Origin: Malacoraja senta
Taxonomy: Eukaryota
DNA length: 64,000 bases
Reading direction: 5' to 3'
NCBI GenBank assembly: GCA_038087875.1
Contig: CM075990.1
Location: 10,788,001-10,852,000 of the forward strand
This document shows positions 9,601 through 48,600 of this stretch, piece after piece. Position numbers and translations under genes: made by a program. Position 1 is the stretch's first letter; the number at the start of each line of letters is the position of its first letter. The notes beneath the pieces are model-generated. The model had not been told where the DNA came from. It worked only from the letters and a program-made list of their open reading frames with translations, and did not search any database.

Positions 9601-12600
9601 TAAATTTCAATAAAGTACATAAGCTACTACACTGCTCCTGGCAAGAGGTATAAAGGGCATCAGAGACCCACCCCATCATGGTCACACACTAATTTCACTC
9701 CTGCCATCGGGAAGATGATATAGGAACTGAAAACCGTAAAACCCAGGTTCAGGAACAGCTTTTTCTCACAGCAATCAGGCTACTAAACACTACAACATCC
9801 AAATAAGCTCTGAACTACATAGACGGGAGCATTGGTTTTGACTTTGTGCACTATTATTATTTGTCTGTATGCGTGTGTATATAAAAATATACTGAACTTT
9901 TTGTTTCCACTTAATATATTGATTAGAGAGTACTATGTTTACATATTTTGTTATTCTGCTGCAAGAAAGAATTGCATTGTTGTGTTTGGGACATATGACA
10001 ATAAAACACTCTTGACTCTTTTTCTGCCTCTACGGTAATTTATCCTGCCAAATTGTCCCATGGTCTCAAAGAGGCATTAAAAATGGGTATACTTTAAAAA
10101 TAAGATAATTTGGTGAAATCTCAGAGATTGTGACTGGAGTGATGCTGTGTGTTGTGATGAAAATCCTGGTTTATGGCCAGAGTTAGCAAATTTACACTCC
10201 AGTAATTATCCAATTATTCTCATCCATTTTGACTTCTAGGCCACCATTTATCATTTCTTGCATTCCTCGTTCAGATTCCCAACCCTCATCGCCTCGTTCA
10301 CGATGCACTCCTCCTCCCAACCCATCTTCCAACAGCATCCCCCAAATTCCATTCTTCCCTTCCCTTCTGAAAGATGCCCTTCTCTCTGCCAATCCTTCAT
10401 CCTTATCCAAGTATATTTTACCTTTCGTAACTTTGGTTTGGTCTCAATTTCACAAAAGCAACACCATGATAAATGAACGTGTTTATATTCCACATATTAA
10501 TAATGCAGTGGTGGTTTCAAATGAATTGTTATTCCAACATTAAAATCATCTCAGTCTGCCATGTTAAGATCCATCCTGAGCAGACAACAAACTGCTGAAG
10601 GAACTTGATGGATCAGGCAGCTGCCTGACCCGCTGAGTTCCTCCAGCAATTTTTTTTCCTCAAGATTCCAACATCTGCTGTCTCTTGTGTCTCTAAATAT
10701 TCTTCCTACCGATTTGAGGGTGTTTCTTCCCGCTGAAGTGAGATTTTCCCATTGGGTTCCACAAAGTCTTCTACCTGCACAAACAAAGATTCACTTGCTA
10801 ACAAAACTCCAGAATAATAATTGATCAACTTAGTCTAAATACTTTCGAACTCAGGTTAGAGAAAGTTATACTCATTTTTTCTTGTTTAAAATAAATCATG
10901 CATAAATCAAACAGGTGTAATAGCTGGGAAAGTAATATGAGTGTAATATGGAGATACTCCAATACAAAATTAAATGTTTTCAAAAAAACCAAAACATGTG
11001 TATATTGTGTGCTTACCATGCTGGAAATTTCCTTAATAACAATTTAGTGGCGACTATTTGCATACCTTGGGTATGCAAGCAAATAATTTCACTGTGACTT
11101 GTCACATGTGATCAAGTATTCATTCACTTCCTTGACCTAAACTATGAACTCTTTCACTTTTGACAGATACCACCTGACCTGAGCAGTTCCAAGATTCATT
11201 ATTACTACTGCAGATTTCCATAACACAGTATTTTGCTTTTGCCATCGCTCTGATCCTCCAAGCAAGGGCATTAAGATGACTTGCAGTCAATATGGTAAGA
11301 AATCATACTCTATTGACTACAGGCAATGCATTTGAATACAATTTAAAAATGGCTTTAAAAATTGATTAGTTGTGACCAGCAGGTGGCAGTATTGCCTCAA
11401 TATTATCACAAATAGGCAACACTAATAGGCCTACTTTTATTAGGAGCTTTTCATTATTACAGACCTTACTGTTATTTCCATATCTTATTTAGAAATATTC
11501 AACCAGTAAGGCAAGAAATAAACTGAAATTAGTTTATAACTTGGGGTATTAACAATCATATTTGTAGATTTCACAACCGAGCTTCCAAGGGATTCCTCCA
11601 CTCGACAAACCCTCTAAAAGTGAACCCAATACCAAATGTCAAGTGTGGAAATCTACAAGTCATGCGCAGTTCTACACCTTCACCCTGCCTGGTGCATATA
11701 TAATGTAGTCAAAGTTCACCTCTCTTTGTCCAATGAAACAATGCACTATTTGTCTTTACAAACATTGTTTTATTTTAATAACCCCTTGTCAAAGTCTCAG
11801 TGGAGCTCACTACTGTTCTGAACTCAGTAATCTCAAGCTCCTCAATTGTAAAGGGCCTGTCCCACTGTACGAGGTAATTCTCCCTAGTTTCCCCTGATTC
11901 GAACTCGGAGAATTACGGTAATAGCCGTTCGTAGGTACTCGGGGCTCTCGTGGACATTTTTCACAGTGCTGAAAAAACGTAACGAGTTACCACGTTTCCC
12001 GAGTACCTGCCGTTAGCATTACGAGCCGCTACGAGACGTCCACGAGCTCCGACGCAGCCGCTGCGTACATTCTACGTACTTACCACGAGTTTGATTTTTT
12101 TTTAAACTCGGGAGAGCTCTTGAATTACCTCGACAGGCCCTTAAGGTAAGTTTGTGACATAAACACTCCAGCTTGGGTTGGGCACAGCAAGATTGAAGGA
12201 GGAGAGAGTAGTCTCTCGCACAGTACCAACTCTTCGTAAAAACATAGTTCAAAGTTCAGATGTATGTAGTAATCCAGAATTTACGCTATGCACAAAGAAT
12301 TTCTGCCACACCACAAAAATGAAAGAGATGACTTGTACTCTGTCAATTCATGCTTCAATGATTCTAACTGAAAAGAAAATGCTGACCCAACACTTTCAAA
12401 TAAATCTGTAATGTCAGTCCAACAGTCAAATTTAACTCGAAAAAAAACCCATGGATTTTATTTCCCTCCCCAAGACCATGATTGTCACAGCATGAAATTT
12501 GAGTGAAAAATGAATGGTTTTATGATTCTGATGGGGAAAAGGAAGCTGCTCCCATTGAAATCATCAATTATATTTTCATTTCTGACGACAGGCTTTTCTC

Positions 12601-42600: not shown

Positions 42601-45600
42601 CGCTATTTTCCAGGTTACTTGAGTGTTGTTACTGCTGCATTAGCAGAGAAATCCAAAACAAGATCCAGCCTCTTCAACAAACGTATAACCCATTATAGGT
42701 TGAACTTATGCGCAGATTAATCAAACATTTATAAATTAATCTTTGCCTGCATTTTCACCCCTGTGTACAAATTTAGTGTTGTTTCAAACTCACTTTATGC
42801 AACATCTCAAAGCTAATGTTCTTGCAGAATAGTGGTGCTGAAGAAAAATTATCTTTTCTTTGAAAGGCTAATATTTTTAAACTTAAATTCTCTGAACCTA
42901 GCACCAGAAAAATTGTTTGCAAGATTTTCTTTCTCAGGAACAATGAGCCAAACAAAACATACCTGGATGATTGTTCAAGAGCTGAGGTACAGAACCGACT
43001 GAACCATGCAAGATCTGGCCAGGAACTGACTGCTGATCGGACGTAAGTGCAAGTTTGTTGGCGTGACGAGAAGGTCGTGGTGATTTCTTCTGCTTTTTCC
43101 ACTTGGATGAGTCACTCATTCCTCCAGCCCTCATTTTAAGCTGCAAGTTGAATGTGAACATATTCTAATGCAAGGTCTGCTTTAAAATACTCAGATTCAA
43201 ATCCAGAGAATTATATTTGTTTGCAAACTTCCCTGTTCAGTTTATCACTTCAAGTGAGTGATGCTCGCCGCATAAAATGAAAAACAAAATGGCCACTTAT
43301 TTATTCATACTAAACCAATATTAAGGAATGAAATTTACCCCATGCCTAAACAACAATTAATAACAATGATGAGGTACAACACTGACATGGAAGTGATCAA
43401 AAGGTATTGTTCATTTTTAAATGCTTTGATGTGATTCTGAAAACTAAGTTCTCTGTCTGCTGCTAATTATGAATGAAATTCCTGCAACAGATTTTCACTC
43501 GTTAATATTTTTAACACATTAAATGTATACCCGGACTTTCTTGTTTGCAATCTGAAGGTGAAATATTATTTATCCAGTAGGGCTTATTCACATCATCATT
43601 AAGAGCATTCCAAACCCAACAATGGAATCTTGGCTAGGTTAATTAGTTCTGGATAAACGCTAAGCATACATGGGGGGAGAAAAGCAGGGCACTACAGACA
43701 GAAATAACACAACTTAGGCTATTGCACCAATTCATTTTGATCCAAAGCAAAACTGAAAGTAAACAGTCATTTAACTGATCACCCTCACCACATCCCTCGC
43801 TAAATCTTTACCAAGCAACACAGGTCAGATCCCGGTCCAAGGATGAAAATTACCAAAAATTAACCACCCAAGTTACAAATATCGCTCTTTGCTGCACGTC
43901 GCTGCAGTAGTAAATCACAATGCAGATGGAGGAATGATAGGAAAATATTTCTGAAAGATCCATCAATAATGGTGCTATGTGGGGATGCCACTAAATACAG
44001 CAAAAGTGAAATTATCAGGAATACCCCATATTCTTTAAATGAGCTGTTTGGTAATATTATGGAAATAAAAGGCATTCAAGATAGAAATGAGGATTTCAGT
44101 AATATTGATGTACACAAACACGTAAACTGAGCCTCTCTGCAAATGCATAAGAATCAAATTTGATATTGAAAATGGAAGACCAGTTAAATTACAACAGCAA
44201 AGGATCATAATGCTTATAATATGTTCAACAAATGCACAATGGAAGAACCAAACTTATATTTTGAATAGTTCATAATATACTGAAGGTCTGATTTGTTGGC
44301 ACAGTATGGTACAGTAGCTGTGAACAAACCAAACTCCATCTACATACTGTTGCTTGTCAGAAATTATAGCAAGAAACATCAGATTTCAAGTTGTCCAAAT
44401 CTACTAGTGTATAGAAAGGGAGGTATCATACAAATCAGTTCACAGTGCAACCAACAATCATTTCAAGTGACCAGCATCTGCTGCTTAAGGACCAACTATG
44501 TGCATATCAGGTAACTCCAATCATTACATATATTGATAATTAGAACTGACACCCTGAAGAATTAATTTTCTTAATAGGGAAATGGCGCAAGAGCTCGTCA
44601 ATTTGATGGAAAATATGTATTCTACCTCTCCCCAATAATGAATTTTGAATTTATGGGAGAAAACAACAGGACATTTTCACCTATGTGTTTGATTTACTTT
44701 TTAAAAATTCTAAATAAAACTGTTTTTTTAATTCTTTCATCACAAGATTGTAAATGTTATTTGATGAAATTACATCCAGGATCCCAACTTCCATACTAGT
44801 GTGAACAGTATTCAGACTTTGGGACTTTCCTTCCACTGACAAAGCTTGCATCAGTCTAATATCCTTACCTGCACTCGTTTGTTTTTCCACATGATAGTGT
44901 AAGCCTCAGGAGGAAAAAATGTTGCCAGTAAATAGTAAATTAAAAAGTTGTAAAATGATTGTGGTAAGGGATTTAAAAAATCTCAATTAAACTTTCATCT
45001 ACGTTTTAATTATTTCACATTTGAAAGCATACAAAACTACGGATCCTCTTTATATATATATAGCCATGTATGAATTTTAAGACACAAATTCATGCCTTAG
45101 GATGTCCATCTAAACCATTTGTAGGAGGAACTTCAAAACATGACCATCACCTCATGCAGTGCTTGATGCGAACCATGCAACATAATCAAATACTTTAGAA
45201 TGAGGACACCTTAGATAACTTCAGAGTCTACAAATTTATTTGGATTTACTAATTACCTGCATTCCAACAAGCCAAACATCAAAAAGTTTTAATTGAGCAA
45301 TCAACAAACGTTTGTATGTTTTGGTAATGATATTTTTCAAAAAAAAAGTATTTGCATTTCCGCATATCCATTTCATGCACTGCTTGACAGTCATGTTGTG
45401 CACAAAAACCGTGTATTGAACCTTCACAGGGAGAAGTTCGCTCATTACTCCTGATTACTAGCCATCTTACACATGCGCCAAACTTCTTAAATGTTTTCAG
45501 CATGCTCACACTTCCATTTTAAAAATCCCATTTATTTTATATTTATCGATAGGAAAGATGATTTATTCAAAGACAAGTATTCTGTACAACAGCAAAACAA

Positions 45601-48600
45601 AGTGCTGGAGGAACTCAGCTGGTCAGGCAACATCTATGAAGGGAAAAGGACAGGCGATGTTTCAGGTTTGGACCCTTCCAGACGCCTGTCCATTCCCCTT
45701 CACAAATGTTGCCCGACCCACTGAGTTCCTCTCGCACTTAGAGTTTTGTTCAAGGTTCCCACATCTGCAGTTCCTGTGTCTATTTTGTGCCACAATTTTG
45801 TGAAGAACATAATAATGATGCTCGTGTCGCATTGGTTAAAGTATACCTACATGATCTTCGTATTAAAAACTTTTTTTTAAAAGATTAAACAAACCTGACA
45901 ACATTGGGATGGAAATCAGTGAGGTCAATTGTATGAGAGATAGGTAAATCTACTGGCAGCAGGTTAATATGCTCTGATAATTAACACCACAGTGAAAGAA
46001 GATTTAAGATGTCCAGTCAACATCAGCCCGAACTTGACAATCAGGTCTTGACTCTGACGAGTGGCCTTTGTTGGAGGTATTGAATTAATGTCCTAATCAT
46101 ATTTAATTAATTATCCTGATCTCCCGGAAAACAAATAAAAGGTACATGTGTGCATTTGAGAAATTGTGTAAAACAAACACAGTGAGGCAGGGGAGACGAG
46201 GACAAAAGAAAAAGTGTTTTTCAAAATAGTTTAAAGATTTCCGTGAACTGCATTTATTTCTTGCTTAGTCAATGTCTTTAAATATAACAAAAGTGTCCAG
46301 AAGCGCAAAGTTCCAACATCAAGTATATAATTTGAAAATAAATGCAGCTGAACTTTCAGGGGCAGGCAGCAATGGAATTAAAAATGCAAAAGGTCGACTT
46401 CAAAGACTCCCAAGATGTCTCACAATGCTCTGCTAATGCAAATCAAATCAGTCAGTTTAACAGGAACAGACTAAGCCAAAGTGGATGAACAGTTGTGCAT
46501 TTCCCAAATTCCTTCCATACTTCACTCACAATCACTTAACATATTCCCAATCTTAAAACTCAAACCTTAAATACAGAATTGTCAGTAACTTAAAACTGTC
46601 ATCTCACTTTCCCATTCTATGTGGGATCACTGACCCAAAACTTTGATTAGGTTTCTCCCTCCATAGATGCTGCCTGGCCTGCTGAATGTTTCTACAGAGT
46701 TTGGTTTTTGTTTCAGATTTTCAGCATCTGCAGTTGTTTTAATATTTCGAGAACAATAAAGGAGATTGATCTTCTGTGTAGCACTTACACCAATACTTGG
46801 ACAGACTTTCTCGAAAGTGCAGAAAGTAAGTAAACTACTGGATGCCCAATTAATTATTAAGACTGTTCAAATGACAGTTTCCCATTTATAAAAGGGGTGT
46901 TTTCCATATATTGGGAAAATTCCAAAAGAACACTCAAGCCTCAATTTCCTGTCAAATAATGATTTAGTGTCATTGCAACCTTTTAAATGTTTTTATTTAA
47001 AATTCTGAACTCTTTGAGAAACATTAAATAAGCGTTGCCAGGCACAAAGCAGTCAAAACAAGATCATAATGCATACAAGCAAAGAAAACACACAAAAACA
47101 GGATGAAGTAAATTAAACACACAGCCCTATTTAAGCTAAAAGCCACCATGGAATCAACGGAAAATAAAATATCAGTCTACCTTCTTCATACTGGTTCCCA
47201 CAAAACTTTTGGCTTCTTCTTTAAATTGAGGTAACCTGCAGAACATTAACAAATGTTAGAAAGTATAAAAGTAAAATCCGCAGAATAGTTTCAGTAATAA
47301 GAGGCATAGATAAGTGAACGGTCACAACCTTTTCCCAGAGTAGAGTCTAGAAATAGAGGAATAAAGGGATTCGGCCGAATGCAGGCAAATGGGATTAGCA
47401 TCGATTGAATTTTGAGAGCATGGACGAGTTGGGCCACAGAGCCTGCTTTCGTGCTGCACAAGTCTAGTAATGCATAGACTTATGAAAACACATGAGATAA
47501 ATTACTTTGCAATATATACACCAATGTTAAAAACCACATGAAGTGGATTATTAGGCAAAGAGAGCAGGTGCTAGATCATGCAATCCATGCATTACTGCCC
47601 AAGTTTCATATTCCTTTAAGGAGTAAAGCTGAGGGACTGAGTGTCTTTGTAATAAAGTGCAGCTGCCTTAAAATGAACCACGCAATATCGGAAAAACAAA
47701 GCAGAGAGAGTTTTGGACAGACAAAATACACAATATTAAATTGTATATTAAAACCAATTTAAGATTACAAAAGAGAGAATGGACAGAACTCTCTGGACAA
47801 ACTAAAGATACCAGTTTCTTCTTATAATTCATTGAATATCTGACGATAATCAGACTTTTTAAAGTAATGGTTTATCTTTTAAATGCTGCACGCCTACTGT
47901 CAATTAGTCTACAGTAATTCCCCACTGCTTCCTAAGATTTCTGTCCGAACAGCAGACATGGCTCCACTTCTTCTAGTAATTTATAAACATTTGAAACCAT
48001 ATCTGCTCACCTGAACAGAAATCTTATTGACAGTATGCATGCAACATTTTAAGAGAAAGAATACTATTTTTATTTTTTTAAGTACACAAAAAATGACACA
48101 GGAACAAATATATTGCAGGACTACAGCTGCATGCTAAAGAGCCAGATCATGCCTGTAAAACCTTGTTCCCAATTTTTTTTCCTGAGGCTGCAAAAGGAAG
48201 ATAATTACTCCTTCACTGGGACAGAGAAAAAGCACAAAGGGAGACAAAGTATAGCAGAGACTGTGGATATGCATTTACAATGGACAAAATTTGAAATGCA
48301 GATCAATTTCTTGATCTTCAATATCAAAAGTATTACTTGCATTGGACACAAAATAATAGTGTCACTGGAAAAAAACTGCAACTAATTTGTGTGGAATGAA
48401 ACATCATATAAAGAGAGCTGGGAGGATCAGCTGGGCAGTAGCTACATCAAATGACCCTGCCAGCATAGTGCAGGCAATTCTAAATCCACTTGGTCACGAA
48501 CTTGCTAAGTCGCTCTCCAGATGGTCATATTGGTGTGCAAAGGGTACAATGCAACAGTATCACATTCTGCCACAATTAACATAGAAACTTAAATTTGAGA

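What the first reader, a model, noticed from the sequence alone, without database searches (positions are those of the whole stretch)
44869..44904. 36-nt frame-preserving GBF1 microexon candidate with a GAG acceptor
Seen: the minus strand reads CATTTTTTCCTCCTGAG|GCTTACACTATCATGTGGAAAAACAAACGAGTGCAG|GTAAGG. It has a clean pyrimidine tract, a near-consensus donor, length 12x3 and phase 0, like the flanking exons (..SMKK | LKMR..). It would insert [12 protein letters not shown] just after the DCB domain, extending a polybasic stretch. GAG is the rarest 3' splice site, which fits regulated inclusion. It is not in the canonical human GBF1 as I remember it. Tissue regulation and any functional effect are inference.
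Basis: partly seen in the sequence, partly recalled or inferred. Interest (0 to 1): 0.7.

Follow-up and report, generated by a model that had tools for sequence, protein, structure and literature searches.

The report
Conserved 36-base GBF1 alternative exon

Summary
Observation confirmed. Minus strand 44904..44869 is an open 36-nt AG..GT segment ([12 protein letters not shown]), phase 0/0, in the 4,040-nt intron between the GBF1 exons ending ..SMKK and starting LKMRAGG.

It is not chance. The same 12 residues sit at the same junction in annotated GBF1 isoforms of skate and catshark (identical), other sharks, sturgeon, gar, teleosts, frogs and birds. Of 277 fetched proteins informative at this junction, 136 carry it and 137 have no insert at all. 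Plus and minus forms are annotated within single species, so it is a cassette exon. Two RNA-seq-assembled teleost mRNA contigs contain it.

Genomic DNA from a shark, a gar and a teleost shows the same unusual GAG acceptor, the same CAG|GTAAG donor and a conserved upstream element. Synonymous sites in the exon are almost frozen (0/10 and 2/10 changed, against about half in the flanking exons).

No mammalian sequence sampled carries it.

Its effect on the protein is inferred only. It adds three basic and two aromatic residues at the start of the DCB-HUS linker, 20 residues before phosphosite S233. AlphaFold2 weakly predicts that it nucleates a helix.

Tissue regulation is untested. I found no paper on this exon. 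It is already known from annotation; interest is modest.

The parts
44869..44904 (-). 36-nt alternative cassette exon of GBF1, phase 0/0, encoding [12 protein letters not shown]
   Evidence: sequence and translation; identical peptide at the same junction in Amblyraja and Scyliorhinus isoforms; 34/36 nt identical to a teleost, 32/36 to gar.
44905..44920 (-). 3' splice site: 12-nt polypyrimidine tract (TTTTTTCCTCCT) followed by the rare GAG acceptor
   Evidence: GAG|GCT is also found in shark L005, gar L001 and teleost L002. It is inferred in birds from ..PLPFSLE-AYSILW.. read-through isoforms.
44921..44939 (-). Conserved upstream intronic element TTTACTATTTACTGGCAAC, probably holding the branch point
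   Evidence: Identical in shark L005. Gar and teleost have TCACTAATCAC(T/G)GGCAC at the same distance. Unique in the window.
44861..44868 (-). 5' splice site CAG|GTAAGGAT, 8 of 9 consensus positions
   Evidence: CAG|gtaagga in gar and teleost, CAG|gtaagc in shark.
44834..45190 (-). Conserved intronic island around the exon: about 286 nt upstream and 35 nt downstream
   Evidence: blastn of the window intron against the shark intron gives its best segment here, 72% identity over 385 columns, E 4e-49.
47181..47237 (-). Upstream constitutive exon (..[19 protein letters not shown]), the end of the DCB domain
42963..43140 (-). Downstream constitutive exon ([26 protein letters not shown]..), holding the polybasic stretch and the SP site that corresponds to human S233

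Best explanation
This is the skate or ray ortholog of an ancient gnathostome cassette exon of GBF1, the cis-Golgi Arf guanine-nucleotide exchange factor.

The spliceosome can join the ..SMKK exon (donor at 47181) directly to the LKMRAGG exon (acceptor at 43140). Alternatively it includes the 36-nt exon 44904..44869, which inserts [12 protein letters not shown] in frame.

Inclusion is probably regulated. The exon pairs a strong donor and pyrimidine tract with a deliberately poor GAG acceptor. It is also wrapped in conserved intronic sequence and has frozen synonymous sites, the usual signs of embedded splicing-control elements.

In the protein, the insert lies between the residues that correspond to human K213 and L214. 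That is the first part of the DCB-HUS linker, 20 residues before phosphosite S233. It adds three basic and two aromatic residues, and may turn a disordered stretch into a helix.

Shown here: the exon, its splice sites, its orthology, its presence in annotated isoforms and assembled mRNAs of other species, and the plus and minus forms.

Inferred: that it is spliced in this species, that inclusion is regulated, and any effect on GBF1 function.
For: - Sequence and phase.
- Best pseudo-exon score in the intron.
- Same insert in a teleost representative.
- Insert present in 84 of the 120 top teleost hits, with 33 lacking it.
- Sharks, skate, sturgeon, gar, frogs and birds carry it.
- Chondrichthyan RefSeq isoforms exist with and without it in one species, e.g. 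Amblyraja X1-X3 with it and X4 without.
- Uninterrupted 1889-aa and 1868-aa ORFs containing the exon lie on 6.4-kb and 7.6-kb RNA-seq contigs.
- GAG acceptor, donor and upstream element are conserved in shark, gar and teleost genomes.
- Synonymous changes are 0/10 and 2/10 in the exon, against 23/39 and 19/39 in the flanking exons.
- The intron's main conserved island is centred on the exon.
- AlphaFold2 predicts helix 206-229 with the insert (pLDDT 45-55), and coil without it (pLDDT 32-37).
- S233 lies in the linker and matters for cytokinesis: PMC10442430.
Against: - No RNA data from this species could be examined, so inclusion here rests on orthology.
- The window's own annotation was not seen.
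- Gnomon isoforms are predictions, though usually RNA-seq based.
- No conserved binding motif for a known regulator was found. UGC near the 3' splice site is present in gar and teleost but absent within 100 nt in the window. GCATG sites are upstream only and not positionally conserved.
- The predicted helix has low confidence. Its hydrophobic moment is no higher than in shuffled sequences, so a membrane-binding amphipathic helix is not supported.
- My recollection that a lipid-binding module lies nearby was wrong: BP3K is residues 886-1370.
Confidence: 0.9

Rival explanations
1. It is a chance pseudo-exon: an open AG..GT segment in a long intron that is never spliced.
For: Introns of 4 kb hold many such segments, 111 here. 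G at position -3 is the least favoured acceptor base (established knowledge).
Against: The peptide matches annotated skate and catshark isoforms 12 of 12 at the same junction. It is 34/36 nt identical to a teleost, with no synonymous change. The splice sites are conserved in four genomes. It is present in assembled mRNAs.
Confidence: 0.01
2. The exon is real but constitutive in this species, and the minus form seen elsewhere is an annotation artefact.
For: In several species the longest annotated isoform (X1) includes it.
Against: Minus forms are annotated alongside plus forms in many independent species. A full-length RNA-seq contig protein without the insert, P0257, exists. In Leucoraja-like entries all three listed isoforms lack it. 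A conserved weak acceptor fits partial inclusion.
Confidence: 0.07
3. The exon is a relic here: conserved in relatives, but no longer spliced in this lineage.
For: No transcript data for this species were available. Mammals seem to have lost or degraded it.
Against: The open frame, both splice sites, the pyrimidine tract and the upstream element are all intact. The upstream element is identical to that of a shark, and the peptide to that of skate and catshark, where the exon is annotated.
Confidence: 0.02

Closest known systems
Annotated GBF1 isoforms carrying AY(N/T/S/A)I(L/M/F/S)WKNKRVQ (e.g. Amblyraja radiata XP_032868447, Scyliorhinus XP_038638745, gar, sturgeon, many teleost, frog and bird XP entries)
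   Same: Same gene, same intron, same phase and same 12-residue insert, identical in skate and catshark. Where DNA could be read, the same GAG acceptor and GTAAG donor.
   Different: None of substance. The window is a different batoid species, with 56/59 identity to Amblyraja in the next exon.
Conserved vertebrate regulated microexons (the class described for neural, SRRM4-dependent exons; the cytohesin-1 3-nt exon is the Arf-GEF example cited in PMC6724607)
   Same: Short, frame-preserving and deeply conserved. It has conserved flanking intron and a weak 3' splice site, and inserts a few charged or aromatic residues next to a folded domain of an Arf-GEF.
   Different: At 36 nt it is longer than the strict limit of 27 nt. 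No UGC motif lies close to the 3' splice site in the window. Tissue pattern is unknown. It is apparently absent from mammals, whereas the core neural set is retained there.
A second alternative exon in the same intron of bony vertebrates ('exon A': IPSCILDK..NQLER, 25-27 aa)
   Same: It sits between the same two constitutive exons and is also frame-preserving. It is annotated in gar, bowfin, basal teleosts, a bat and a pangolin.
   Different: Unrelated sequence. It was not detectable in the window intron, in the shark contig or in a percomorph teleost.

Membership tests
GBF1 (GBF/Gea subfamily Arf-GEF) gene | Collinear exons encoding the DCB, HUS and Sec7 regions, with high identity to GBF1 orthologs | tested here: met
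   26 tblastn segments on the minus strand cover residues 139-1417 of Amblyraja GBF1 at 76-100% identity. Homologs carry PF12783, PF01369 and PF23325.
Orthologous GBF1 12-aa cassette exon | Same intron, same phase and homologous peptide | tested here: met
   the insert lies between ..MKK and LKMRAGG in 136 fetched proteins. The window peptide is identical to the skate and catshark versions.
Orthologous GBF1 12-aa cassette exon | Functional AG acceptor and GT donor conserved in orthologous genomic DNA | tested here: met
   GAG|GCT and CAG|GTAAG in window, shark, gar and teleost.
Orthologous GBF1 12-aa cassette exon | Present in real transcripts | tested here: met
   two RNA-seq-assembled contigs (SRR19345946, SRR11587736) hold the exon inside full-length ORFs. 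These are teleosts, not this species.
Orthologous GBF1 12-aa cassette exon | Included in transcripts of this very species | not testable with these tools
   No RNA data for the window's species could be reached.
Alternative (not constitutive) exon | Both inclusion and skipping forms within one species | tested here: met
   Amblyraja, Cebidichthys, Paralichthys and Hippoglossus each have annotated plus and minus isoforms. These are predicted models.
Neural SRRM4-type microexon | Length of at most 27 nt (strict) or at most 51 nt (broad) | tested here: inconclusive
   36 nt meets only the broad definition.
Neural SRRM4-type microexon | UGC motif shortly upstream of the 3' splice site | tested here: not met
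   the nearest TGC upstream in the window is at -125. Gar has one at -17 and the teleost at -24.
Neural SRRM4-type microexon | Neuron-enriched inclusion | not testable with these tools
   No tissue-resolved data.

The most novel reading that the evidence does not exclude
The exon is a functionally important switch at least 450 million years old. On this reading, its deliberately poor GAG acceptor and frozen synonymous sites are kept by selection for regulated inclusion. The insert would turn the start of the DCB-HUS linker into a helix and so change partner binding or phospho-regulation around S233. Mammals would then have lost or degraded the switch. None of this has been studied.
Probability: 0.3. 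Interest if true: 0.45.

Novelty: already known. Interest (0 to 1): 0.3.

Why it matters
GBF1 is essential for Golgi function and is a host factor for many RNA viruses, yet its isoforms have hardly been studied. This exon shows that most jawed vertebrates can make a GBF1 with 12 extra residues at the start of the DCB-HUS linker, close to a phosphosite linked to cytokinesis. Mammals, where nearly all GBF1 work is done, appear not to. For splicing biology it is a clean example of a GAG acceptor conserved across sharks, ray-finned fish and, by inference, birds. The exon itself is already in public gene models.

Tried and rejected
1. I recalled that the PIP-binding BP3K module lay beside the insert. 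The paper places it at residues 886-1370, so I dropped the idea.
2. Amphipathic membrane-binding helix: the hydrophobic moment is no higher than in shuffled sequences.
3. Known regulator motifs (RBFOX, PTB, NOVA, MBNL, SRRM4-UGC, QKI) showed no positionally conserved site across window, gar and teleost. The exception is ACTAAY at the presumed branch point in the bony fish only.
4. Genomic DNA of skate, catshark and three birds could not be fetched because the genes exceed 100 kb. An osprey contig ended 2,976 nt upstream of the next exon, before reaching the microexon.
5. Exon A was searched for in the window intron and not found.
6. An Rfam scan of the intron gave only sub-threshold miRNA-like hits on an unrelated hairpin repeat.
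7. Six literature searches found no paper describing this exon.
8. The scan's own notes hold nothing on GBF1.

Full report
**1. Observation**

The minus strand at 44904..44869 reads GCTTACACTATCATGTGGAAAAACAAACGAGTGCAG. It is preceded by cattttttcctcctgag and followed by gtaaggat. It is 36 nt, open, and translates to [12 protein letters not shown].

The upstream exon ends ...ACCAGTATGAAGAAG|gtagac at 47181 ([19 protein letters not shown]). The downstream exon begins cag|CTTAAAATGAGG at 43140 ([26 protein letters not shown]...). Both boundaries are phase 0. The window contains no N.

**2. Chance**

I used a crude weight matrix of my own, with frequencies from general knowledge rather than MaxEnt. 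The 4,040-nt intron holds 111 open AG..GT segments of 9-60 nt and length 3n.

- This segment scores 13.3 bits; the next best scores 6.7.
- Only six segments in the 128 kb of both strands reach its score.
- That is roughly 0.2 expected per intron of this size. Splice signals alone are suggestive, not decisive.

**3. Gene context**

tblastn with thorny-skate GBF1 lays 26 collinear segments on the minus strand. They cover residues 139-1417 at 76-100% identity. The window therefore holds about two thirds of GBF1 from a batoid that is close to, but not the same as, Amblyraja: 56/59 identical in the next exon. Earlier notes of this scan also call the genome a skate.

**4. Cross-species protein evidence**

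A library search with the HUS exon returned one full-length vertebrate representative, P0010 from a stickleback relative. It reads ..[28 protein letters not shown]...

- *Teleosts.* A search seeded with P0010 gave 120 teleost proteins. Of these, 84 carry the 12-residue insert and 33 have none.
- *Other groups.* A search seeded with gar GBF1 brought in more lineages:
  - sturgeon and paddlefish: AYNILWKNKRVQ
  - bamboo shark: AYAILWKNKRVQ
  - thorny skate and catshark: [12 protein letters not shown], identical to the window
  - frogs: AYNIFWKNKRVQ
  - many birds: AYSILWKNKRVQ
- *Chondrichthyans.* Listing the cluster members showed plus and minus RefSeq isoforms side by side within single species. 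For Amblyraja, X1-X3 carry it and X4 does not.
- *Overall.* Of the 277 fetched proteins in which the pattern found both flanks, 137 have no insert, 128 have the microexon, 8 have it together with a second exon, and 4 have other inserts. W, K, N, K, R, V and Q are invariant.

**5. Transcript evidence**

Two proteins with the insert come from Logan assemblies of sequencing runs. They are uninterrupted ORFs of 1889 and 1868 residues on contigs of 6.4 and 7.6 kb (SRR19345946, SRR11587736). These must be spliced mRNAs, and the 36 nt are in them. A third such protein, P0257, lacks the insert.

**6. Genomic evidence**

Shark, skate and bird genes exceed the 100-kb limit for fetching DNA. Three loci could be read:

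- alligator gar (L001)
- a percomorph teleost (L002)
- a 25-kb shark scaffold holding a partial gene model (L005, GCF_021869965.1)

All three encode the exon in the orthologous intron. The acceptors are:

| Species | Acceptor |
|---|---|
| window | tcctcctGAG\|GCT |
| shark | ttcctccGAG\|GCT |
| gar | ttttcttGAG\|GCT |
| teleost | tctcttctGAG\|GCT |

The donors are CAG|gtaagg in window, gar and teleost, and CAG|gtaagc in the shark.

A 19-nt element lies 17-35 nt upstream of the acceptor (TTTACTATTTACTGGCAAC). It is identical in the shark and recognisably conserved in gar and teleost (TCACTAATCACTGGCAC). It most likely includes the branch point.

Two bird isoforms start inside the intron and read ..PLPFSLE-AYSILWKNKRVQ. 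E directly before the exon, combined with the obligatory AG, means the bird acceptor is also GAG after a pyrimidine-rich tract. This is an inference from translation.

It is a conserved property of the exon.

**7. Nucleotide constraint**

I counted codons that encode the same amino acid but differ in sequence:

| Region | window vs teleost | window vs gar |
|---|---|---|
| Flanking exons | 23 of 39 | 19 of 39 |
| Microexon | 0 of 10 | 2 of 10 |

With a background rate of 0.59, zero of ten has a probability of about 1e-4.

A blastn of the window intron against the shark intron gives its strongest segment over window 44834-45190: 72% identity over 385 columns. That is the exon plus about 286 nt upstream and 35 nt downstream.

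Frozen synonymous sites and conserved flanks are the established signature of regulated alternative exons.

**8. Mammals**

A search seeded with a bat fragment returned about 13 mammalian proteins that include the junction. They come from human, colobus, macaque, porpoise, deer, lemurs, dog, tuco-tuco, pika and pangolin. None has the microexon.

In the gar-seeded ranking, frog and bird plus-isoforms scored above the cut-off, while no mammalian plus-isoform appeared. This suggests, but does not prove, that mammals lack an annotated version.

One bat protein has VLLFKNLK immediately before LKMRAGG. This may be a decayed remnant, and I did not follow it up.

**9. Protein context and mechanism**

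The insert falls between the residues corresponding to human K213 and L214, counted on P0352. This is just after the last DCB helix, and 20 residues before S233. S233 is a vertebrate-conserved phosphosite in the DCB-HUS linker, and mutating it disturbs cytokinesis but not secretion (PMC10442430).

AlphaFold2 on residues 1-345 of a batoid plus-isoform, using 32 aligned sequences, gives two things:

- a confident DCB fold
- a helix over residues 206-229 that spans the whole insert, though at pLDDT of only 45-55

The matching minus-isoform model has coil after residue 206, at pLDDT 32-37. The difference points to helix nucleation, but confidence is low.

The segment is not unusually amphipathic. 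It is not near the BP3K lipid-binding module, which is residues 886-1370.

It adds net charge +3 plus Tyr and Trp. Its WKNKR resembles the KWKKQK motif 18 residues further on. What the insert does remains an inference.

**10. Regulation**

Motif scans around the exon in window, gar and teleost found no positionally conserved RBFOX, PTB, NOVA, MBNL or SRRM4-type site.

- The window has three GCATG sites 190-275 nt upstream.
- Gar and the teleost each have one GCATG upstream, at other positions.

I cannot name the regulator or the tissue.

**11. Literature and novelty**

Six full-text searches found reviews of Arf-GEF isoforms and GBF1 phosphorylation, but nothing on this exon.

The exon is nonetheless in RefSeq, UniProt and GenBank models of dozens of species, including close relatives of this one. 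I therefore class it as already known, with an unstudied function.

**Verdict:** Interest is modest.

Noticed in passing
window 45600-45740 (-), in the same intron about 700 nt upstream of the microexon: A near-perfect hairpin with a stem of about 60 bp (RNA fold -103 kcal/mol, z -16). It gives sub-threshold Rfam hits to several unrelated miRNA families. One arm has a related copy at 10619-10647 (+), so it looks like an inverted pair of a dispersed repeat rather than a miRNA gene.
   Followed up: partly
L001:63185-63259 (gar); proteins P0237, P0241, P0272, P0276, P0300, P0301, P0351, P0360: A second alternative exon in the same intron of bony vertebrates (IPSCILDK..NQLER, 25-27 aa). It is annotated in gar, bowfin, basal teleosts, a bat and a pangolin. 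tblastn did not find it in the window intron, the shark contig or a percomorph teleost.
   Followed up: partly
protein P0351 (Rousettus), junction region: A bat GBF1 model has VLLFKNLK directly before LKMRAGG. It loosely resembles ILWKNKRVQ and may be a decayed mammalian remnant of the microexon.
   Followed up: no
proteins P0382 (Aquila) and P0392 (Columba): These bird isoforms start inside the intron upstream of the microexon and read through its pyrimidine tract and acceptor (..PLPFSLE-AYSILWKNKRVQ). This suggests an internal alternative promoter or a retained-intron model.
   Followed up: no
proteins P0274, P0314-P0336 (sharks and skates), N-terminal part; probably upstream of window 57652: In chondrichthyan isoforms QFKEE sits at 0-based string offset 197, 211, 225, 237 or 250/251. 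This means further alternative in-frame inserts of about 14 to 54 residues inside or before the DCB domain.
   Followed up: no
proteins P0339 and P0342 (shark); corresponds to the 3' part of window exon 43140-42963: Some shark isoforms skip the roughly 31-residue variable segment (KLPLTSEQ..NNHPG) after ..SRHAS. This implies an alternative donor inside the exon that follows the microexon.
   Followed up: no
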